DNA from: Selaginella moellendorffii
Taxonomy: Eukaryota; Plantae; Lycopodiophyta
Length of the DNA: 64,000 nt
Reading direction: 5' to 3'
Assembly (NCBI RefSeq): GCF_000143415.4
Contig: NW_003314285.1
Span: forward strand, 1,871,471-1,935,470
Under the pieces are notes generated by a model. That model saw only the letters and a program-made list of their open reading frames with translations. It was not told where the DNA came from and did not search any database. The position numbers and the translations under genes were made by a program. Numbering within the stretch: position 1 is the first letter of the stretch; every line of letters begins with the position of its first letter. Positions 6,857 to 62,100 of this stretch are shown in pieces.

Positions 6857-8962
6857 TCAAGTGGTCAAGTACAAGTCCACCACCTCCGCCTTCCTTGGCT
6901 TGTTCAACAGCTTCAGCTTCCTGTGAAGAAGGCCGAGCGTTTTGTCATCCGGCACCCAGCGTCGCTCGACAAGTTTCGTGAAGAGCAGATATGCTTCTTC
7001 GGCCATGTTCTCGTGGACAAGCCCCGTGATCAAAGCACTGTAGGTGACAACATCCGGCACACATCCACCTTTCACTGCCTCCTCAAACAGTTCTAGAGCG
7101 GCCGCAGATTTTCCGCATTTGCACATAGCATCGACTAGTGTCCCATACGTGACGAAGTCCGGAATAAATCCCTCGTCCACCATCGTCAGAAGCATCGTCT
7201 CCGCATCTGAGAGCCTGTCGTCCACACACAGTCCATGAACCAAAATATTCCAGGTGACGACGTTGCAGCAGTTCTTCTCTAGCATCTGCTTGTGAATCTG
7301 GAGAGCTTTATCAATCTGCCTGCGCTTGCAGTGACTGTCGAGCATAACGTTGTAGAAGAACACGTCCGGCTCGCAGATCTTCTCGTCCAAAACTTTGCTA
7401 AACAGCGCACAAGCTTCGTCGAATCGACCACCTTTGCAAAGCCCGTCCAGCAGCACCGTGTAAAGAAGAATGTCCACAATCTGATATTTCTCGCGAGCTT
7501 GTTCCACCAGAGTTATAGCCTCGTCAAGCTCCTTTTTCTTGCAAAGCTCCTCCACCAACATGCTGTAGCTCGAGGCGTTAGGCGTACAGCCCCTCTCCAC
7601 CATCCTGTCAAACACGGCCTTGGCCTTCTTCACTCGCTCCGCCTTGCAAAGCCCGTCAATGCAAGCGTTGTAGGAAACCACGTCTGGAGTAAATCCCCGC
7701 CTCTCCATCTCGACTAGCATGTCCTCAGCCTTGCCAATATGTCCCAGCCTGTGGAGAGCCCCGAGCAGCGAGTTGTAAGCTACCATGTTTGGCCGGCACC
7801 CGAGCTTCAGCATCGAGTCTAGAAGACCCATGGCTCGTTCCACCTCGCCACCTTTGCAAAACCCGTCTATCAACGAGGAGTACGTGACAACGTCGGGAGT
7901 GCAGCCACGGTTGCTCATGTGATCCAGCATCCTGCTCGCTGAATCCAAATCCCCGGACTTGCAAAGCCCGTTAATCACCGTGGTGTAGCTCACGACGTCG
8001 GGAGTCACAGGCATCCTCGCCAGAAACTTTCGTGCTTCGTCCACTCGGTCGCACTTGCAAAGTCCCTTGATGAACGAGTTGTAAGTCACAACGTCTGGAA
8101 AGTATCCTCGCACAGCCATTTCCTCGAGCATCTTCTTGGCCTCGTCCAGCTTCCTCTCCTCGCAAAGCCCCTCCACGATCACGTTGTAAGTATAGATGTT
8201 TGGAGAGCATCCCTTGTCACGCATCTCATCCAGTAACTTCACCGCGTCCCTGGTCCGCTCGGCCTTGCAAAGCCCATCCACGATGTTCGTGTACGTGACC
8301 ACCGTTGGAAGGCAATGGTTCTTCACCATCTCGGCCAGGAACTTGAATGCTTGGCCGAAATCCTTGGCCTTGGAGTAGCCGGAGATGAGAGCATTGTAGA
8401 TGGCATCGTCTGGAACGCACCCCATCTCCTTCATTCTTCCCAGGAGCTTGCGAGCTTTCTCGAGCTGGTTGGATCGGCAAAGTCCCCGCAAGAGAATCGC
8501 AAAGGTGAAGGCATCGGGCTGGCAGGACTTGTCGATCATCTCCTGGAACACGGCGCTGGCTTTGTCGTGGCGATGCTCTCTCGTCAGCTGGAGGAGGAGC
8601 TTGTTGTACGTGAAGACGTTGTGCTCGTAGCCCATTCGCTTGGGCGCCCACTCGAAGAACCGGAGAGCCGCCTCGGAGCTCGGGAGATGCTTGAGAACAT
8701 CCGCCACGACGTAGGTCGTGAGCAAGCCACTCCACTGCCTCATGATCTCGTCCATGCTCTCGCCGCGCTTGGCATTCTTGAGGAGATCGAGGATGATCCT
8801 GGAATTGATGGAATACCTGGCCATTTTCTCGTCCTGATGCTGCTGCTGCTGCTGTTGGAGCGATGGCGCTGGCGCTGGTAATGGCGCAAGATCCATCGCG
8901 GGGGAAGAAGAATACGCTCGCGATCGAAGGACATTGGAGAGGCGCGTGTGGAGCCGCCTCAT
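6857..8962 (-). CDS. P-class PPR protein, probably mitochondrion-targeted
   Basis: Intronless 701 aa with tandem 35-aa repeats (PDVVTYxxLIxGLCK). Arg/Ser-rich N-terminus MRRLHTRLSNVLRSRAYSSS. Confidence 0.93.
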   Translation of the reverse strand: MRRLHTRLSNVLRSRAYSSSPAMDLAPLPAPAPSLQQQQQQHQDEKMARYSINSRIILDLLKNAKRGESMDEIMRQWSGLLTTYVVADVLKHLPSSEAALRFFEWAPKRMGYEHNVFTYNKLLLQLTREHRHDKASAVFQEMIDKSCQPDAFTFAILLRGLCRSNQLEKARKLLGRMKEMGCVPDDAIYNALISGYSKAKDFGQAFKFLAEMVKNHCLPTVVTYTNIVDGLCKAERTRDAVKLLDEMRDKGCSPNIYTYNVIVEGLCEERKLDEAKKMLEEMAVRGYFPDVVTYNSFIKGLCKCDRVDEARKFLARMPVTPDVVSYTTVINGLCKSGDLDSASRMLDHMSNRGCTPDVVTYSSLIDGFCKGGEVERAMGLLDSMLKLGCRPNMVAYNSLLGALHRLGHIGKAEDMLVEMERRGFTPDVVSYNACIDGLCKAERVKKAKAVFDRMVERGCTPNASSYSMLVEELCKKKELDEAITLVEQAREKYQIVDILLYTVLLDGLCKGGRFDEACALFSKVLDEKICEPDVFFYNVMLDSHCKRRQIDKALQIHKQMLEKNCCNVVTWNILVHGLCVDDRLSDAETMLLTMVDEGFIPDFVTYGTLVDAMCKCGKSAAALELFEEAVKGGCVPDVVTYSALITGLVHENMAEEAYLLFTKLVERRWVPDDKTLGLLHRKLKLLNKPRKAEVVDLYLTT

Positions 8963-43900: not shown

Positions 43901-44847
43901 TTACTGCAGGTGAAAAATGTAAATCATAGTACTCGTGTTACTGACACTTGAAAGGCGATGTTTTTGCAGGACGTACCTCGTAGCTTTCCAGCTGCGGGAG
44001 ATGAGAAAAGGGATCCTGGTACGTGTTTCTACTGCTCTCGATGCTGGGATTCAAAGTTTCGTGCTTGTACGAGAAGAGATCCACAGGCTGCTGTTGCATT
44101 TGCATGCAGCTGCTGCTGGACGCCGCCATGTTTTGCTGCTGCTGCTGGTGTTGCTGCAGCTGCTGCTGCTGCTGGTGCTCGTCGTAGAGATATGAACAAG
44201 AGCCCGTGCTCTGGCATCGCTGCGGCGGCCTCTTCTTGAACATCCGGCACACCACCCATCCTTCCTCCTGCGAAAAATTGGGGTACTTTTAAGATGAGAA
44301 AGATAGATTCCAAGTTTCTAGCTTACGCTGCCGCTTTGCTCGTCCTCCAGCCGGTACTCGTGCATTATCCAGTCGGTCTTCTGCCCGTTTGGCGCCCGTC
44401 CCTTGTAGAACACCAGCGTCTTCCTCATCCCAATCAGCTTGAACTTGGTGTGGATGGCTTTGTCCCTCCCTGTTGCCTTCCAGAACCCCGCTGTTGTGGC
44501 CCTGTTGGTTCGGCTCCCGGTCGGATACTTCTTGTCTTTGTGGCTGAAGAAGTACCACTCGCTCTGATCTGCCGAGCTCGCGCAATCCTCTGTGATCCCA
44601 ACCTTTGTCAAAGATTTACCATTCTTGCAGAAGTTGGAATGCTCTAGAGTCTAGAGGCTACAAATTCTTCCATACCTTGCAGGTCCCATGGCTCCATCTT
44701 GTAGAGATCAATGTCCCGGATTATGTCGAGATCGATGGCCTCCGAGGACACCTTCTTGTACAGGTAGTAGCCAACGAGCTCCTCGTCCGTGGGGTGGAAC
44801 CGAAAACCCGGAGGGACGTGCGAGTGGCCGTGCATAAACGGAGACAT
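43901..44847 (-). CDS. NAC transcription factor, VNS (VND/NST/SMB) class
   Basis: [51 protein letters not shown], poly-Q, LPQLES box. 3' end is either a spliced TAA at 43901 or an unspliced stop at 43938. Confidence 0.9.
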
Positions 44848-46576: not shown

Positions 46577-48830
46577 TTAAACTGGGAGTGGAGCATCCTC
46601 TGGAGCTGTAGGCACCTTGTTGAGCGCAGGGATGTCTGTGAACTCCGACAGCAGCGCTCTAAACTCGTCACCCGCCATCGTCTCCTTCTCCAGCAAAACT
46701 TCGACGATCTTGTCGATGGCGGCTCTGTTCTTCCGAATGTGACCCAGCGCGATCTCGTACGCCTTGTCCGCGATGGATTTCACAGACCTGTCGATGTCCT
46801 CGGCGAGCTTCTCCGACATGCTGTTGCGCGCCATCATCCGCATGATCACGTCGCCACCTTGTGCCGAGGGATCGACGAGCGACCAAGGACCGATCTCCGA
46901 CATTCCAAACACCGTCACCATCTGCAAAAAATCATCGTCGTGACCTCAGCCTCTCCCAGTGGATTCATGGAATGGAGCACGCAAAGTACCTGGCGAGCCA
47001 TCTGTGTGACTTGCTGCAGATCGCCCGCAGCACCGGTTGTCATCTCTGGCTCTCCAAAGATAACCTCTTCCGCAGCTCGGCCACCCAGGGCTCCCACGAC
47101 TCTGGCGAAGATTTGCTGCTTGGAGATAAGAGTTGGATCTTCACCTGGTATGAACCATGTCAATCCGCGAGCTTGTCCTCGTGGAACCAGGCTCAGTTTC
47201 TGGACGGGATCGTGTCCCGGTGTCAGTGTTCTGCAAAACACATTGTAAGTCATGGAAGACTGAAAACGTAGCCGGATACTTACGCACAAACAGCGTGACC
47301 GACTTCGTGATAAGCAACCAGGCTTTTCACTTTCCCATCGGTCATGACGGTTCCTTCCATTCCAGCTACAATCCTGTCGATGGAGTCATCCACCTCTTTT
47401 GCGGATATCGCAGTTCTTCCTCTTCTCCCAGCCAGGATTGCTGCCTCGTTCAGAAGGTTCGCAAGGTCCGCTCCACTGAAGCCAGGAGTTCTCATTGCAA
47501 CAATGTCCAGCTTGACGTCCTCTTCAAACTTTTTGTTTGCTCCGTGAACTTTCAGAATCTCAGTTCTGCCTCTCACGTCTGGCACATCTACAGTCACCTA
47601 TCGAAGGAAAGAAAAATCATTTAGGATGAACGAGCATTGCATCTTCAGACTTACCTGTCTGTCAAATCTTCCTGGCCTCAGCAGTGCAGCGTCGAGAATA
47701 TCTGACCTGTTGGTGGCGGCGATCACTATAACACCCGTGTTGCCTTCAAAGCCATCCATCTCCGTTAACAGCTGGTTCAAAGTTTGCTCTCGTTCATCGT
47801 TTCCTCCTCCGATTCCTGTGCCTCTCTGCCTTCCCACCGCATCAATCTCGTCGACGAAAACAATGCATGGAGCATTCTCCTTGGCCTTCTTGAACAGGTC
47901 CCGCACTCTCGAAGCTCCAACCCCGACAAACATCTCCACAAACTCTGACCCCGAGATTGAGAAAAACGGCACGCCAGCTTCTCCTGCAATGGCCTTGGCC
48001 AGCAAAGTTTTCCCCGTCCCTGGAGGCCCAACCAGCAGCACACCTTTCGGTATCTTTGCACCCACAGCAGTAAACCTCTCGGGCTTCTTTAGAAACTCTA
48101 CCACCTCCATGAAATCCTGCTTTGCCTCGTCAACTCCAGCAACATCCGCAAACGTCACCCCAGTGTTTGGTTCCATCTGGAACTTGGCCTTGGACTTTCC
48201 AAAAGCCAGAGGATTCCCTGGACCGCCCGGCATTCCTCCACCTCCTCTTCGTGACAAAAGAAAGAGCCCACCCACGAGCAAAAGAGGAAACGCTAAGTTT
48301 CCAAGCAAGTTGACGACGGTGGAACCCAGATCCTCCTGTGGTATATGAGCAGCAAAGTCGATGTTCTTCTCCCGGAATTTTTGTAGCAGCTCTTGGTTTA
48401 ATCCTGGAAGCTGGACTCTCACTCTCTGGATCCTGTTTCCAAGCTCGGGTGACACAGCTTCCACGATTGCCACTGTTCCATTCTCAAAAAGATCCACCTT
48501 TTTAACTCGATCCATGTCCAAGTATTCCAGAAATCTCGAGTAGGACATCCTTGACGAGGCCACCCCTTGCTGTTCTTCCGCTGCTCTAGCCTTTTGAGCC
48601 ACCAAGGACGAGATTCCAGCCACGCCTAGACCGATCTTTCTCAGCAATCCTCTCCTACCGGTGCTACTGGCACTAGAATCTTGCTGCTGGGATGCGGCAA
48701 CATGGATTCTCGAGCTCTGCACTGCCAGAGGCTGGATGCTTACCGCGAGCTTGTGGCCGAGGTAATCCTTGCCCAGCGCGCTGGAGCTAGGGCTTCGAAT
48801 CGCCACAACGCTGGCTGTGGCCGACGCCAT
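46577..48830 (-). CDS. FTSH2: thylakoid ATP-dependent zinc metalloprotease FtsH2/8 (type B)
   Basis: Transit peptide with [23 protein letters not shown] Walker A, VFVDEID, HEVGH zinc motif, [18 protein letters not shown]. Confidence 0.96.
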
Positions 48831-53590: not shown

Positions 53591-54842
53591 CCTATGTGAA
53601 ATTATTTGTTTACCTTTGAATCAATGGACATTTCAAATATATGTTTACGACTGTGAGAACGATCAGTACAAAAGAACTTGGCTGAGATTGGCATGGCATC
53701 CATAGCCCGTGCAAAACTTCTTGCCAATCAATTGCTAGCATCTGGTGATCGCCAGCCATGGCAAGTTCCAGCGCGTCTAGAAACCACTGCCTGGAGCTGC
53801 TCCACAATCTTGTGCATCCTGGACGCAGGGAATAGAATGGTTGAAGACATCAGGCATGCCCGTTGCCAAGATAGAGGAGTTCTTCACTCTCCTTCTGACA
53901 ATGGCGATGCACTGTGAATTGCTTCCCTACGAAATACCTTTACTCACCCTTCAACTAAATCTAGAATATTCTATTTGTGGATGTGAGAAATGTTCCAAGG
54001 GATCTGCAGTGAATTTTCAAGCAGCAAATCTTCATGTTAGAAATTTTGATGATCTACAGGTTTATTTATTTTCTGAAAAAGTAGAATAAAAATAATGACA
54101 CCATGTGTAACTTTTATTCCTGCGATGCTTACTGGGATTTATCCCACTCAGAGTTAGTAATAATGCAAGAGTTGGGGAATCTGGCAATTTTATTATGTTT
54201 TTATCGCCTTTTCAAAAAAGGCCCACAACCCTAAACACGACTCTATTATTCAATTGCTTTTAGTTATGTAAATCCCAGAATGTTCTCCATTAGATTCATG
54301 ATCATGTGGGAAATAAAAAGATCTTTTTTCCTAAACAAAGTTCTAGACTGAATGATTAACTCCATAAACCTTAGGTATTTTCAGTTTTCATTCATGCCTT
54401 ATGAAATGATTGTAGTTTTATATTCATTGATTCATGTGGGATATTGAATCCACCAATTAAAATAGACTTGTTTACAAACTTTTCACAATCTGGTCAATAG
54501 AAACACCCGTCTTCTTTCCAGCAATGCACTTGTGTCTAGATTTGATTCCTTTCACGTGAAGAAACCTTGAATATTTCTTGCCGTGATCATCAATACCTCC
54601 ACTTTAAACGGACAAGATCAATCGATTTAAAGGCCTTCTCTCATCTCTGGTACACATAAGCAGGAGCTACAGAGCCAAGGATACTTTTCCTTTTGTAATA
54701 TTCTTAGCTCTTTCAAGTGTTGCAATGTGGTTGGTCATGAAAAAATCTCTCTTCTTACAACTTTGGACTTGCAGCATTTATAAGGATTGCAAGCAAGCAT
54801 AGAAGTTCAGAGTTGGAAAAAGAAGTTTATAGAGGAGAGAGA

Positions 54843-56531
54843 ATGAAGAGTCTCGTCGCGTTTTTTCTTGTTCTTGCTGTGATCTCCCACTTTTGCAATG
54901 CGCAAGATTTGAGTTTCACAGCCACGACTCCCAGCCTCACCAAAGGCAAGCCAAACACCTTCATTGGAACCACTGGCGATCAGATCGCGTCGTCTCTTCT
55001 CGCATCAAAGACTCCCGCAATGCTTTGGGGCTCGGTTCCCGCGAGTGCAATCACCAACATCTGCCAGAAGATTGTCCAGACTGGAAGACAGGAGTACACT
55101 GCAAAGATAGATGGCGACTGGGGAGGATCCGAGACCCTCACGTTAAAGGTAGAGTCTAGATAAGTACCTTTGTTACGTTAATCTTTCTCTTGCTGACGAC
55201 TGGAAGCTATCTCTAGGTGGTCGCAACCGGTGGCTGTGGTGCCGCTCCAGATTCATCCGGAACGCAGTTCGTGTTCACAGACAACTATGGCCGCAAGAGT
55301 GCTGTAAGTTGAGTGATCATTTTGCAGCAACATAAATCACTGGATGCTTACCAGATTGTTTGCCCAAGCAACGCTGGAAGAACTGGCTGTGGTGTGTACA
55401 TGACCGGCAGTGACGTGGAAAGCCTCTACAAGAAGCGCTTGGAACTCGAGCAGCAACTACTGCTCACAAACTCTTCTGGCGATCACCAGGCAGCTCGAAG
55501 ATTCTTGCTTGGTGGCTGCAAAGAAGAAGCAGGGAAAGGTACCTCGGGGTGATCCATATGTTAGCTCGTTCCTTCCTTTTTGCAGGAGCAATCGGAGGTG
55601 CAATCACGGGAGTGTTGGGAACTGGAGGTTGCTTGGGACTGGGACCATTGGCACCTTTCTGCATCGCTGGCGTTTTGGGAGTGAGTGCTGAGCTTGGCGC
55701 GGCTGCTGGCTGCGTGAGTGCGTGCTTCCCTGGGGATGCAACGGTGCAAACTTCCACGGGCGAGACAAAGACGATGAGCCAGCTCCAAATCGGTGACAAG
55801 GTATCTATCCTGATCATCCATCGCTTCCACTAAACCGTTTTCCTCTGCTCGCGTCGTGAAGGTTGGGACGCTCAAGAACGGGAGGCTCGAGTTCGGTGAA
55901 ATCTATGCTTTCGGCCACCGAGACTTGGAGCAGAAGAGTGACTTCGTCAACCTGGAACTATCCCACTCAAAGACCCTTGAGCTCTCGCGCCTGCATTTCG
56001 TGCCAACGCTGCTCAAAGCTGGTGTGTGTCATCTCTTCCTTCCACCACTTTTTTTTCCACCAAGCTCACGAACCATTTCTAGGTGGAGTCGAATTCAAGC
56101 GTGCGCAAGACGTTCTTGTCGGAGATGTGTTGACCGCTTCATCGCCCACCAACAATTCGATCATGACTCCATTCCCAGTCACACGAATCTCGATCGTTAC
56201 AAAGCCCGGCCTCTATAATCCATTGACTCTCCAAGGAACTATCGTCGTCAACGGAGTCGCCGCCTCGGTCCACAGCGACTGGTTCCTGGATGCCCTGTTT
56301 GACGCGCTCGGCCTCACTGCTTACCTCCCAGCGGCATACCAGGCTATCCTCTTCCCGGCGCGATTGCTCTACACACTCCTCGGCCATGATTCATACCTCG
56401 CGCTCTACAAATGGATCGACGCCAGGATCAATGTCGCCGAGTTCGGCACTGAAAATGGCGGCAAGATTGCAGCGGCGGCGCTGCTCGCCAGTGGAATCGC
56501 GTCCCTGCGATTGCTCAAGAACCCTATGTGA
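54843..56531 (+). CDS. secreted Hedgehog-type Hint (Hog) domain autoprocessing precursor, 466 aa, 6 exons
   Basis: Exons 54843-55148, 55217-55303, 55355-55538, 55586-55800, 55862-56021 and 56083-56531 (all GT-AG, 1401 nt, open). Signal peptide, CFPGDATV...LQIGDKV, FGHRD, LELSRLH, VGDVL, GLYNPLTLQGTIVVNGVAAS, SRR-like ILFPARLLY. Confidence 0.9.
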
Positions 56532-58039
56532 AAGAGTACTGGTATTTGCTGCAACCTCATAGAATGGCTTGGAAACTGGATCTTAGCTTAAACGGAGAAT
56601 AAGAAATCATGTTAAAGCTTTCTTCTGACAGAATGATATAAATAAAATCTCAAAACAAGAAATAAGATCTATCTTGCAAATTAACAAGAGAAATAGTGCT
56701 TTAGAACGTGAGAAATCAGGTGCCAAAGTCTTAAACTTCAAACCACTAAGAAAGTACACAATTTGGACAAGGCTCTTGGTGCAAGGAAATATTTTTGGAT
56801 TAGATTACTCCCTCTAATCCGCCCTTTTGAGTAGTAGATCAAAGCATTTAACAATGGTGCTGGCCAACATTGGATATTATTGCTAAACAAACATCTTGGA
56901 ACTCAAAGTGAGTTATAAGTGGGTTTCAATTCCTATTTTAATATACACTATTATATTTTTATTTTGCAACTTAATAAAAAAATATAGATTTATAGGACTA
57001 CAAATTCTATTTTTATAATGAAAATGTTATTTATCAAAATTGTCATGAAAATACAAAATTTGTAATTCATGATGACTATTGCAAGCATTTTATGCACTCA
57101 ATATTGCAACAAATATATAATTGTATATGGGAGTATTATATATTTACACATATTTAGATATACTTTTTTTTTGAGTTTTATGCAAAAATATTATGCATAC
57201 AATTCCTTGTCAATTGTTATAAAAACAATTGAAACTTGACTAATAAAATATATTATATATACATGGAGTACAACACTTCAGAACATAAGACTAATACCAC
57301 ATCATCTAAAATAATATGATGTTATTATAAATTTAGTGAGAGTTTTTTTTCCTATTCTTATATCATTGTATGTAGATTTGTGATCTTGAGATTATTACCA
57401 TTTCTTTTGTATTCTATTTACCTCTCATTTCACATTGCTGTGTTTCATTTTCAATTATAACGCACTCTAATGTAAATATAGTATTTTGATTACTTTAGCA
57501 AGTACTTTTAATTACTTGCAGCTTGTTTATGGTGTGGTACTCTAATCTAAGTAGCAATTAATTGGAGTAGCAGCAAATACAGTCAATTGGAGCACATATG
57601 CAAGTGCAATGCTTTTTTTGGTGTTTGGGGCATTGAGTAAATAATTTGTATTATAGCCATGATAAGGTGTTAGTTTTATTGATTCTTTGTGTTCTTAATC
57701 ACACATATAAGTTTTTAATATTGCAGTGGTTTATTGAGTTTATATATATTGCAAAGTGCAATATAGAATTTTCTTTCTTAGGTTTTTACTTCTTAGTTTT
57801 AGCTATGTAATTATTACAATGATTGTGTCATGAAGAGCAAAGAGCATCATAACATACTTATAACACATGTAATGATAGGATAAGATTTAGATATGCTATC
57901 ACTATGAATTCTTAGAACTTTAGGGGATAAATGGGGATAAAATAGCTATTAAGGGCTATCTCATTAAACAATTACCCCTTTTTCAATTTAGTTAAAAGGA
58001 AGAGAAATAAAATGCATTATATATCTCATGGGAAATTAC

Positions 58040-59195: not shown

Positions 59196-62100
59196 GATGA
59201 GTCTCAGCGAGTACTATTCAATGAGATTGGGCAACTAGTCTCGTTGCATACGCAGAGATGAAAACGGTGATCCGAGTGCGTACACGTTTTGGTGCAAAGA
59301 CTTCGCAATTGTTCCTTGAGTATGGATTTGGTTACCGTTTTGTACCGTATTATATAAGCTTGCTCTTGGGCTCATAAGAAGGCTTGAGTTGTTTCAGTAG
59401 CACGAGTTTGCGCTTGGGCTCGTGAGTGAGGCACATTAGCAACTCAAGGTTACACTTAGAGTTGGCAGGATTAATGTTAGCCTATCGGTGGTTCCATGAG
59501 TTGTTCCATGTACCGTGGGTGAAAGTAAACTTTCCCTGAGTTTGCTATGAGTGGCAAATAGGCTGGTCCGTAGCTGTTTAGCACGGCACTAGTGGATCCT
59601 TCCTAGGCATGATTATAAGTGGATCAATCAAGACTATAGGGATTAATCTATTGGTTCAAGTAATCATGGCCGTGCTCTCTCATAAACTTTTCTTCGATTG
59701 AACTGAAGGCAGTGTGAAAGCAAGCTTGAGGTTTGGTCAAAGTTGAGACCGAAAAGAGAGTCATCAGGGATGGAGGATCAAATACGTAAATCATCTTCTC
59801 TTTTGGAGAAATGATTCGTAACGAGGTGTTAACTCATTGCTTATGTTCATATTATGCAATCAAGAGTCCCTATCTTGATGCGTGTTGGAAATGATAGTCT
59901 TACAAATAGTGAGTTGTGGGATGGATAGCGGTGAAGCGCTAAACCATTTTGTCTAAGCTTGCTATTGGAAGACTTGGGTTGCAATGCTCAATTCTTTTTC
60001 GAGGAACCTTGCTATTGCTCCTTGAGTAGCTTGGTGTTGGATTAGTGTTGAGTTTGGTCGGAAAGAGAGTGGCATGAGCTTGTCCTTGTTGTGAACAAAA
60101 GTTAGTGATATTGGGTGTTGTAAGTCTCTATCAGTGGAGTGTGGCATTTATGTTGCATTTTGTCGAATTGAGTTAGCACTTGATACTCATATAAACCTTT
60201 GAAGTAATAACATTGGCATTGCTCGTGGTATTGCTCAATTGATGATCAAATCATTGTGATTTCTATACCATATCCATGTGATAATGAGCAATGTGTTTAC
60301 GAAGTTGCTTGGGTAAATGATGATCAACCCCAAAGTGGTTGATGGTGAAGCTAGTCTACCTGCACGTAGTAGCATTGTAGTAGCTTTAACTGGATTCTCG
60401 GAGGTGATCCATTGTGCTAAGCTTAAGTTGGTACCTTGTTTTCTTGAGTTTGCCCATAAGGTGTTGGAAAAGGGTTATAGCATTTACTTGCTATGGCTTG
60501 TCGGTTGATCCGTTAGCATTTGGAGTAGATTGTTGGATGGAGAAGGTGTGTAGTTGGGGCGTTGNNNNNNNNNNNNNNNNNNNNNNNNNNNNNNNNNNNN
60601 NNNNNNNNNNNNNNNNNNNNNNNNNNNNNNNNNNNNNNNNNNNNNNNNNNNNNNNNNNNNNNNNNNNNNNNNNNNNNNNNNNNNNNNNNNNNNNNNNNNN
60701 NNNNNNNNNNNNNNNNNNNNNNNNNNNNNNNNNNNNNNNNNNNNNNNNNNNNNNNNNNNNNNNNNNNNNNNNNNNNNNNNNNNNNNNNNNNNNNNNNNNN
60801 NNNNNNNNNNNNNNNNNNNNNNNNNNNNNNNNNNNNNNNNNNNNNNNNNNNNNNNNNNNNNNNNNNNNNNNNNNNNNNNNNNNNNNNNNNNNNNNNNNNN
60901 NNNNNNNNNNNNNNNNNNNNNNNNNNNNNNNNNNNNNNNNNNNNNNNNNNNNNNNNNNNNNNNNNNNNNNNNNNNNNNNNNNNNNNNNNNNNNNNNNNNN
61001 NNNNNNNNNNNNNNNNNNNNNNNNNNNNNNNNNNNNNNNNNNNNNNNNNNNNNNNNNNNNNNNNNNNNNNNNNNNNNNNNNNNNACCTTAGTATGTAGTT
61101 TGTATGATGCAACCCGAAAGGGATACTGACTTTTGGGGCTAAGGCAATTGAGTTGGATAGAGTCTGGAGTTAGTGTAGAAAAGTGGCCGTTGCACTTTTC
61201 TAGGAAGGGTGACTCTTGTGCCTTTCTTTTGTAGCATTATGCTTGGTGGCAGGTTGCACCTTGCATTTTGTTAAGACTCTATGAGAGTAGTGAGCTCTCA
61301 CTGATCTTGACTTGGTCTTGGTGGCCTTACACCTTGGCTAAGGATGGTGATGTCCAACTTAGTTGTTTGAGGTTGAGATGTTAGTACCCGTACTATAGCT
61401 TTGTCTATGAGGAGGTTGTGTACCAATATAAATCCATCTCATGGTCTTCACTTTAGTTTTAGCTGAGTGTTGATCATGCATAGCTAGCCTCTTCAAAGCA
61501 TGCTCAGAGCTATTGGCTAAATGCATTGGTGAGCTTATTGCAGTTGAGTTGGATTCGAGTGGTCATTTAGTTTGTGCTTGTCAATGAACTTTTATCTCAT
61601 ACCGAAGGTATCACGTTCATGTTGGACAAGTGTATGACTCGATGATGTGAGTTTAGTGTTTGGGTCTTGTAAAGACAAGTTGAAAGAGTGATTGTTAGTT
61701 GCTTTGCGACTAATGATTGCTTGTAGACTTTGTCAAAAGACTATTGACACTTGCTTCACTCGATGATGATTTAGCAATGATAGGTTTGCTTTACCGGATG
61801 GTGTTGCGGAGGATCGTGTCGTTAGACTTACATGGTTTTTCCATGTTGACATGTCGACTCTATCTCTGTCGATATCATTTGGTTGCATTTAGTTCGTGGT
61901 GTTGGATTTCATTGAGTCTTGGATGTGGTGACTCACTCCTTGAGGAAGTGTTATCTGTAACTGAGTTTTGCTAAAGGATTGGTCTCGGTTACTAATTAAA
62001 GTATCTTCGACCTTGGTTAGCTTGGTTGCTGGAAAGCTCCGAGTAGTGATTCACTCATGCTTTCTTCTAGCTTTGTTTTGGTGTTGATGGCATTGAAGTG

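What the first reader, a model, noticed from the sequence alone, without database searches (positions are those of the whole stretch)
54843..56531. Intact secreted Hedgehog-type Hint autoprocessing precursor in a land plant
Seen: a clean 6-exon ORF with signal peptide, about 165 aa of unknown domain (4 Cys), a Gly-rich segment, then a Hint domain beginning A|CFPG (Cys239, codon at 55723). The Hint domain has block-B SxxH, the terminal PLT.GTIVVNGV.AS, an SRR-like amphipathic helix and a hydrophobic C-tail. Known: Hedgehog Hint domains perform an N-S acyl shift at Cys1 and transfer the N-terminal domain to cholesterol. Hog-type proteins have been noted in scattered non-animal eukaryotes, I recall including Selaginella, but I know of no function there and no counterpart in model angiosperms. 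Inference: a self-cleaving, possibly sterol/lipid-tagging secreted system with a non-Hedge cargo.
Basis: partly seen in the sequence, partly recalled or inferred. Interest (0 to 1): 0.9.

Follow-up and report, generated by a model that had tools for sequence, protein, structure and literature searches.

The report
Spikemoss Hedgehog-like self-cleaving precursor gene
This is a real, expressed and already annotated Selaginella gene of a family published in 2008. It joins a secreted green-lineage domain of unknown fold to a Hedgehog-type self-cleaving domain, and what it does in plants has never been tested.

Summary
Window 54843-56531 (+) carries a six-exon, 466-aa gene with five short GT..AG introns. 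All five appear as exact joints in contigs of runs from four studies. The product is identical to GenBank EFJ24570.1 / RefSeq XP_002974348.1 / UniProt D8RTU0 of Selaginella moellendorffii ("Hint domain-containing protein").

Residues 233-382 match Pfam Hint (104 bits). The modelled domain superposes on Drosophila Hedgehog-C at TM 0.95 and rmsd 1.2 Å. The catalytic Cys239, Ser306-x-x-His309 and a helical C-terminal extension with a hydrophobic tail are present. Two positions differ from animal Hedgehog: the general base Asp46 is His283, and Cys143 is Val380.

The same architecture occurs in mosses, a liverwort, ferns, lycophytes and green algae. It consists of a signal peptide, a 4-Cys domain, a Gly-rich 4-Cys hairpin and the Hog domain. 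Bürglin (2008) already described it for Physcomitrella and Selaginella.

The N-terminal domain matches no Pfam family or solved structure.

Self-cleavage is likely. Sterol tagging is plausible and untested.

This scan had already found, and in two cases followed up, other Hog genes of this genome.

The parts
54759..54842 (+). 5' untranslated part of the transcript (approximate start)
   Evidence: Contigs of runs X5 and X7 begin at 54759, and one of X8 at 54779. Contigs cannot fix a true start.
54843..54902 (+). Signal peptide, aa 1-20 (likely cleavage after C-N-A, before Q21)
   Evidence: Hydrophobic N-terminus with Kyte-Doolittle 1.7. Nearly every full-length homologue in the alignment has such a segment. 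Judged by eye, not by a predictor.
54903..55516 (+). N-terminal cargo domain, aa 21-185, across exons 1-3. It is an alpha+beta domain with Cys74, 109, 134 and 143, and ends in the conserved basic motif R179-R-F-L-L.
   Evidence: It is 35-64% identical in ferns, mosses, a liverwort and green algae. The AF2 model has pLDDT 78.7 and pTM 0.72. No Pfam, PDB-sequence or fold match was found.
55517..55722 (+). Gly/Ala-rich 4-Cys segment, aa 186-238 (contains intron 3). It is modelled as two hydrophobic helices and ends at Ala238, the residue whose carbonyl would be attacked.
   Evidence: Of its 53 residues, 14 are Gly and 10 are Ala. Hydropathy is 1.4-1.8. Helices 190-209 and 212-231 are modelled at low confidence. 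Cys218 and Cys235 are nearly invariant in the family.
55723..55725 (+). Codon of Cys239, which is Cys1 of the Hint domain (A|CFPG)
   Evidence: C239 and F240 are invariant in 25 family members. They align to Cys1-Phe2 of Drosophila Hh-C.
55723..56276 (+). Hint domain, aa 239-382, across exons 4-6
   Evidence: Pfam PF01079 at 104 bits. phmmer to 6tyy/1at0 gives E 3e-13. Foldseek gives TM 0.95 by target and rmsd 1.2 Å. pLDDT is about 90.
55916..55918 (+). Codon of His283, at the position of the Hedgehog general base Asp46 (Asp303)
   Evidence: Alignment. His in all 24 aligned family members. His in 83 of 87 aligned representatives, none with Asp.
55985..55996 (+). Block B, Ser306-Arg-Leu-His309 (the T69-x-x-H72 motif of Hedgehog)
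   Evidence: Alignment. The family has T or S, then H.
56268..56273 (+). Codons of Val380 and His381, at the positions of Hedgehog Cys143 and Tyr144
   Evidence: Alignment. Position 143 varies in the clade (V 42, A 42, S 37, C 16, T 12). His follows in 141 of 150 and Ser in 149 of 150.
56277..56459 (+). Conserved helical extension after the Hint domain, aa 383-443 (SRR/ARR-like), with D387, P400, Y403, P409 and R411
   Evidence: Several invariant or nearly invariant columns. Helices 387-433 in the model. P409-A-R-L-L-Y-T-L resembles Drosophila P-M-R-L-L-S-T-L read from the construct printed. The SRR part of the Pfam profile (positions 162-213) does not align.
56460..56531 (+). Hydrophobic C-terminal tail, aa 444-466, and stop codon
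   Evidence: Hydropathy is 1.47 over 444-462. Homologues have hydrophobic tails followed by polar ends of varied length.
56532..56655 (+). 3' untranslated part (approximate end)
   Evidence: A contig of run X1 reaches 56655.

Best explanation
This is one of a pair of expressed Selaginella moellendorffii genes for a Hog-type autoprocessing precursor.

Shown: the gene structure, its splicing and expression, the Hint fold, and conservation of the first-step catalytic residues.

Inferred: the signal peptide takes the protein into the ER. Cys239, helped by Ser306 and His309, attacks the Ala238 carbonyl in an N-to-S acyl shift and makes a thioester. A nucleophile held by the conserved helical extension and activated by His283 then resolves the thioester. 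This would free a product of about 218 residues (Gln21-Ala238). The product would consist of the 4-Cys cargo domain plus the glycine-rich hydrophobic hairpin.

The most likely nucleophile is the 3-beta-hydroxyl of a membrane sterol, which would give a sterol-esterified, membrane-held secreted protein. Because Cys143 is absent, the thioester would be attacked directly. The branched intermediate reported for animal Hedgehog would not form. The Hog part probably stays in the membrane through its hydrophobic tail.
For: The gene model, splice joints and transcript were confirmed. The protein is identical to annotated D8RTU0. Pfam Hint scores 104 bits. The fold superposes on Hh-C at TM 0.95 and rmsd 1.2 Å, and the best match is the D46H mutant structure. 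Cys1, His at position 46 and His72 are invariant or nearly so across green-lineage members, position 69 is always Thr or Ser, and the post-Hint extension holds several invariant columns. The comparison with the paralogue shows purifying selection that is strongest on Hint (dN/dS 0.16). In Drosophila Hh-C the Asp-to-His swap keeps structure and sterol-transfer activity and widens the accepted sterols (review PMC9163320).
Against: No cleavage or adduct has been shown for any plant or algal Hog. The 2026 literature still calls non-Hh Hog function unknown (PMC13353863). Cys143 is reported as required for Hedgehog autoprocessing, including DTT-driven cleavage (PMC12054796), and it is Val here. The sterol-recognition part of the Pfam profile does not align; only a short P-x-R-L-L motif is shared. 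Residue -1 is Ala here, not the Gly of Hedgehog. The models of the Gly-rich hairpin and the tail have low confidence.
Confidence: 0.7

Rival explanations
1. The Hint domain cleaves the precursor, but water resolves the thioester. The domain would then be only a self-removing pro-domain that releases an unmodified secreted N-product.
For: The adduct is unknown for all non-Hedgehog Hog proteins. For that reason Bürglin uses 'adduct recognition region' for the nematode ones. The Pfam SRR region does not align. Cys143 is absent. Vertebrate Hh-C constructs show spontaneous hydrolytic cleavage in vitro (PMC13738340).
Against: His283 at the general-base position is nearly invariant (83 of 87), and the 60-residue helical extension is among the best conserved parts of the protein. 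Plain hydrolysis would not need either.
Confidence: 0.2
2. The thioester is passed to another acceptor, such as a non-sterol lipid, a wall glycan or another protein. This would anchor the cargo to the membrane or cell wall by a chemistry not yet described.
For: The active site differs from Hedgehog at two positions. The extension differs from the animal SRR. This scan's first readers also noted Hog genes of this genome fused to wall-protein-like cargos (unchecked).
Against: There is no direct evidence. The extension is hydrophobic and helical like a membrane-facing SRR. The Asp-to-His swap is known to work with sterols.
Confidence: 0.07
3. The Hint domain is catalytically dead and the protein works uncleaved as a membrane protein.
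For: The loss of Cys143, which blocks autoprocessing when mutated in animal Hedgehog.
Against: Cys1-Phe2, the T/S-x-x-H motif and His283 are invariant or nearly so from green algae to ferns, and Hint has the lowest dN/dS. Position 143 is non-Cys in about nine tenths of this large clade, so loss of activity would have to be ancient while the rest of the active site stayed conserved.
Confidence: 0.03

Closest known systems
Plant and green-algal Hog proteins of Bürglin 2008 (pPp Hog of Physcomitrella patens; pSl Hog EST EH093067 of Selaginella lepidophylla)
   Same: They share the architecture: signal peptide, conserved upstream domain (the '...PNTFIG...' region), Gly-rich Cys segment and Hog domain. 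The motif J cysteine is replaced in them too. Present-day homologues are found in Ceratodon, Physcomitrium, Marchantia paleacea, Adiantum, Diphasiastrum, Coccomyxa and Volvox.
   Different: Nothing essential; this gene is a member. It is one of two convergent copies about 11 kb apart that are 91% identical in protein. The second haplotype of the assembly carries an allele of each copy.
Animal Hedgehog C-terminal autoprocessing domain (Drosophila Hh-C, PDB 1AT0 and 6TYY)
   Same: Hint fold (TM 0.95, rmsd 1.2 Å, about 30% identity). Cys1-Phe2 at the junction. T/S-x-x-H block B. The 'TxxGTIVVNxVxAS' motif. A helical extension after Hint with a P-x-R-L-L motif. Secretory precursor.
   Different: There is no Hedge signalling domain. 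Asp46 is His283 and Cys143 is Val380, followed by an invariant His-Ser. Residue -1 is Ala. The linker before the P-x-R-L-L motif is 13 residues longer. There is an extra hydrophobic C-terminal tail. The SRR part of the Pfam profile is not matched.
Nematode Hedgehog-related proteins (warthog, groundhog, quahog)
   Same: Hog domain behind an unrelated, lineage-specific secreted cargo domain. Cargo-only copies exist. The adduct is unknown. RefSeq even auto-names other Selaginella Hog genes 'warthog protein 4' and 'warthog protein 6'.
   Different: The cargo domains are unrelated. The nematode Hog domains have their own pair of conserved cysteines.

Membership tests
Hog (Hint plus SRR/ARR) autoprocessing domain family | Hint fold detectable by sequence and structure | tested here: met
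   PF01079 at 104 bits against a cut-off of 29.7. Foldseek to 1AT0/6TYY gives E about 1e-14, TM 0.95 and rmsd 1.2 Å.
Hog (Hint plus SRR/ARR) autoprocessing domain family | Nucleophilic Cys1 at the cargo/Hint junction after a small residue | tested here: met
   Ala238|Cys239-Phe-Pro-Gly. Cys-Phe is invariant in the family, and residue -1 is mostly G, S or A.
Hog (Hint plus SRR/ARR) autoprocessing domain family | Block B T-x-x-H that promotes the N-S acyl shift | tested here: met
   Ser306-x-x-His309. The family has T or S, then H.
Hog (Hint plus SRR/ARR) autoprocessing domain family | C-terminal extension after Hint (SRR/ARR, motifs K and L) | tested here: inconclusive
   An 84-residue, strongly conserved helical extension with a P-x-R-L-L motif is present. 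Pfam profile positions 162-213 do not align.
Hog (Hint plus SRR/ARR) autoprocessing domain family | Secretory signal peptide | tested here: met
   A hydrophobic N-terminus with a C-N-A|Q site. Nearly every full-length homologue has such a segment. Judged without a predictor.
Hog (Hint plus SRR/ARR) autoprocessing domain family | Actual Cys1-dependent self-cleavage | not testable with these tools
   Needs protein expression and a C239A control.
Hedgehog-type cholesterolysis active site (animal Hh-C) | Asp46 general base | tested here: not met
   His283 occupies the position. None of 87 aligned relatives has Asp. The engineered Asp-to-His mutant is active.
Hedgehog-type cholesterolysis active site (animal Hh-C) | Cys143, site of the branched thioester intermediate | tested here: not met
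   Val380. The clade has V, A, S or T in 133 of 150 and C in 16 of 150. Its requirement in Hedgehog is reported in PMC12054796.
Hedgehog proper (Hedge plus Hog) | N-terminal Hedge signalling domain | tested here: not met
   No Pfam family hits residues 1-232. No PDB sequence or fold match for the N-domain.

The most novel reading that the evidence does not exclude
This green-lineage Hog clade attaches a plant sterol (or another membrane lipid) to a Viridiplantae-specific secreted domain. It would do so through a variant mechanism that uses a natural His general base and needs no Cys143 branched intermediate. These would be the first sterol-modified proteins outside animals, and a natural counter-example to the reported requirement for Cys143.
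Probability: 0.35. Interest if true: 0.8.

Novelty: already known. Interest (0 to 1): 0.3.

Why it matters
Covalent sterol modification of proteins is so far known only for animal Hedgehog. Hog domains are widespread in protists and early-diverging plants, and none has a demonstrated product.

This gene is a clean, expressed, full-length example in a sequenced land plant. It has orthologues in the transformable models Physcomitrium and Marchantia.

Its active site naturally carries the Asp-to-His 'base swap' that was engineered in Drosophila. It also naturally lacks the cysteine recently reported as required. A simple cleavage and mass-spectrometry experiment would therefore bear on two questions: what plant Hogs do, and how general the new Hedgehog mechanism is.

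As a genome finding it adds no new gene or family.

Tried and rejected
- **Other copies in the window.** tblastn of the protein against the window found none. The paralogue lies beyond the window's end.
- **P0001 (SELMODRAFT_421866) as the annotation of this locus.** Rejected. It is a different, gapped copy that lacks the CFPG junction in its model.
- **Naming the N-domain fold.** Foldseek against the PDB gave E of 0.02 or worse and TM below 0.3. VIA-align over 48,161 chains gave Z of 4.3 or less (profilin, profragilysin pro-domain), below that tool's stated noise level. The ESM-Atlas shape search gave TM of 0.48 or less. A profile search of PDB sequences and the Atlas feature search gave nothing. 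I do not claim a new fold, only that none was recognised.
- **Stand-alone N-domain proteins (91-289 aa), for instance in seed plants.** The search found only Selaginella fragments and two unnamed metagenome clusters. The search is word-limited, so absence is not shown.
- **The two word-indexed family searches.** They were capped at 8000 candidates and returned few rows, so they give no taxonomic census.
- **Bacteriocin-like reading of the Gly-rich segment** (another first-reader note on this window). Not pursued beyond showing that the segment is a conserved part of the precursor family.
- **The Zhao et al. 2019 paper.** It could not be read. Its content is cited through the 2022 review.
- **Contamination.** Rejected. 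The window is identical over the 19,158 overlapping bases to scaffold GL377589.1, a 2-Mb scaffold, and has plant genes (NAC, FtsH) next door.

Full report
**Where the window comes from.** The 19,158 window bases that overlap a fetched stretch of scaffold GL377589.1 of assembly GCA_000143415.2 (Selaginella moellendorffii) are identical to it, base for base. Earlier notes of this scan say the same.

**The gene.**
- The six exons are 54843-55148, 55217-55303, 55355-55538, 55586-55800, 55862-56021 and 56083-56531.
- They join into a 1401-nt frame of 466 codons plus stop.
- The five introns are 68, 51, 47, 61 and 61 nt, all GT..AG.
- Contigs of four public runs from four studies were laid on 54500-56900. 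They skip exactly these introns: intron 1 in three runs, intron 2 in three, and introns 3-5 in all four. They cover about 54759-56655.
- The runs are only guessed to be RNA. Precise removal of GT..AG introns is not expected of DNA, so I take splicing and expression as shown. Expression level and tissue are not shown.
- One contig keeps intron 1. A low-depth joint, 55301 to 55352, also occurs. It may come from the paralogue or be a minor isoform.

**Annotation status.**
- A search of 1.84 billion representatives with exon 6 gave 586 relatives at E up to 0.001.
- Through these I reached the cluster of the Selaginella proteins. One member, P0177, equals the six-exon translation exactly. It is EFJ24570.1 / XP_002974348.1 / UniProt D8RTU0, SELMODRAFT_442486, named 'Hint domain-containing protein'.
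- The second haplotype of the assembly carries an allele with 13 residue differences (P0179).
- A 91%-identical paralogue (P0173/P0181) lies about 11 kb downstream, beyond the window, in convergent orientation.

**The Hint domain.**
- Pfam Hint (PF01079) hits exons 4, 5 and 6 separately and colinearly. It hits the whole protein at 104 bits, residues 233-382, profile positions 7-161 of 213.
- The best solved relatives are Drosophila Hedgehog-C structures, with E 3e-13.
- An AlphaFold2 model built on a 25-sequence family alignment has pLDDT near 90 over the Hint domain.
- Foldseek superposes the model on 6TYY and 1AT0 at TM 0.95 by target and rmsd 1.2 Å. Inteins and BIL domains follow far behind.

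**Active-site mapping.** The HMMER alignment maps the Hedgehog active site as follows:

| Hedgehog position | This protein |
|---|---|
| Cys1 | Cys239 |
| Asp46 | His283 |
| Thr69 | Ser306 |
| His72 | His309 |
| Cys143 | Val380 |
| Tyr144 | His381 |

The first-step residues are therefore present. Two residues tied to the second step in animals are not.

**These substitutions are a feature of the clade.**
- In 25 green-lineage members, His283 and His309 are nearly invariant. Cys-Phe at the junction is invariant. The motif after the last strand is Ser-x-His-Ser with a variable x.
- Among the 150 best representatives, position 46 is His in 83 of 87 aligned sequences and never Asp.
- Position 143 is V 42, A 42, S 37, C 16 and T 12.
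- Bürglin already noted in 2008 that the motif J cysteine is replaced in moss and red-algal Hog domains.

**What the literature says about these positions.**
- The Drosophila Asp303His (D46H) mutant keeps structure and sterol-transfer activity and accepts more sterols (review PMC9163320). It also autoprocesses in cells (PMC12054796). A natural His is therefore compatible with sterol transfer.
- The same 2025 paper reports that Cys143 forms a branched thioester and that C143A or C143D blocks autoprocessing. The plant clade must then either work without that step or not work like Hedgehog.
- I think direct attack on the Cys1 thioester is the simplest reading. This is inference.

**After the Hint domain.**
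- Residues 383-466 are modelled as helices.
- They hold several of the invariant or nearly invariant columns of the family: D387, P400, Y403, P409 and R411.
- P409-A-R-L-L-Y-T-L resembles P-M-R-L-L-S-T-L of the Drosophila sterol-recognition region, as printed in the construct. It sits 29 residues after position 143 here, against 16 in Drosophila.
- The Pfam profile's SRR part does not align. I rate SRR homology as inconclusive.
- Residues 444-462 are hydrophobic. Homologues show hydrophobic tails followed by polar ends of varied length. This suggests a membrane anchor for the Hog fragment.

**The cargo.**
- Residues 21-185 form a domain with four Cys that is 35-64% identical in Adiantum, Ceratodon, Physcomitrium, Marchantia paleacea, Coccomyxa and Volvox africanus proteins of the same architecture.
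- Modelled alone it gives pLDDT 78.7 and pTM 0.72. It has an antiparallel sheet, a packed helix and a long C-terminal helix.
- No Pfam family, PDB sequence profile, Foldseek, VIA-align or Atlas search gave a convincing match.
- It ends in a conserved basic R-R-x-L-L motif. A Gly/Ala-rich, four-Cys stretch (186-238) follows. It is moderately hydrophobic and modelled at low confidence as a helical hairpin.
- After cleavage this hairpin would be the C-terminus of the product, next to any lipid adduct.
- A search for stand-alone copies of the cargo domain found only Selaginella fragments and two unnamed metagenome clusters.

**Selection.**
- The two convergent copies share all intron positions and are 91.7% identical in DNA.
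- Nei-Gojobori dN/dS is 0.43 overall, 0.16 for Hint and 0.40 for the cargo domain. The counts are small.
- Divergence is mosaic. Exon 1 and introns 1-2 differ by 12-19%. Exon 5 and introns 4-5 differ by 0-7%. This hints at gene conversion in the 3' half.

**Prior knowledge.**
- Bürglin (BMC Genomics 2008, PMC2362128) reported Hog genes in Physcomitrella patens, Selaginella moellendorffii and S. lepidophylla. He described a conserved upstream region, a signal peptide, motifs J and K, and none in Arabidopsis or other higher plants.
- His supplementary tables print pPp Hog and the S. lepidophylla EST EH093067. Both carry this same cargo domain and Gly-rich segment.
- RefSeq auto-names other Selaginella Hog genes 'warthog protein 4' and 'indian hedgehog B protein'.
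- A 2026 Plant Cell paper still describes non-Hh Hog proteins as of unknown function.
- This scan has noted about ten further Hog loci in this genome and followed up two, with the same conclusion.

**Verdict.** What remains open is the chemistry and biology. That is worth a bench test, chiefly because of the natural His46 and non-Cys143 active site.

Noticed in passing
beyond the window end; L002:6001-7983 (GL377589.1 about 1938929-1940911, minus strand): A 91%-identical paralogue lies about 11 kb downstream in convergent orientation. Divergence is mosaic: exon 1 and introns 1-2 differ by 12-19%, while exon 5 and introns 4-5 differ by 0-7%. This suggests gene conversion over the Hint-coding half.
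   Followed up: partly
window 55149-55216 and 55301-55352: One contig of run X7 retains intron 1. A low-depth joint that skips 50 nt (55301 to 55352, ends CT..AC) occurs in three runs beside the main 51-nt intron 2. It may be a paralogue contig or a minor isoform.
   Followed up: no
window 55435, 55463, 55486 and 56353-56359: Contigs carry alternative letters at a sizeable share of depth in several runs. This is as expected if the second haplotype's allele (13 residue differences) or the paralogue is co-expressed.
   Followed up: no
window 46577-48830 (-) and the gene ending near 44847 (-): The upstream neighbours are an FtsH-type AAA metalloprotease gene (691 aa) and a NAC (NAM) transcription-factor gene, by precomputed Pfam hits on called genes.
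   Followed up: no
window 60565-61084: An assembly gap of 520 N. The 7.5 kb downstream of the gene is AT-rich (30-47% GC) with no long ORF.
   Followed up: no
other scaffolds of the same genome (P0001, P0192, P0218, P0191): There are truncated or cargo-only relatives. SELMODRAFT_421866 (349 aa) has a model that lacks the CFPG junction. SELMODRAFT_420557 (244 aa) and LOC9657646 (156 aa) hold mainly the cargo domain. These may be pseudogenes, mis-models or cargo-only genes like nematode 'wart-only' genes.
   Followed up: partly
protein clade (150 representatives): The His46 / non-Cys143 / His144-Ser145 signature marks a large Hog clade: 201 representatives at E up to 1e-10. Many are long (800-1450 aa) metagenomic proteins with other cargos.
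   Followed up: partly
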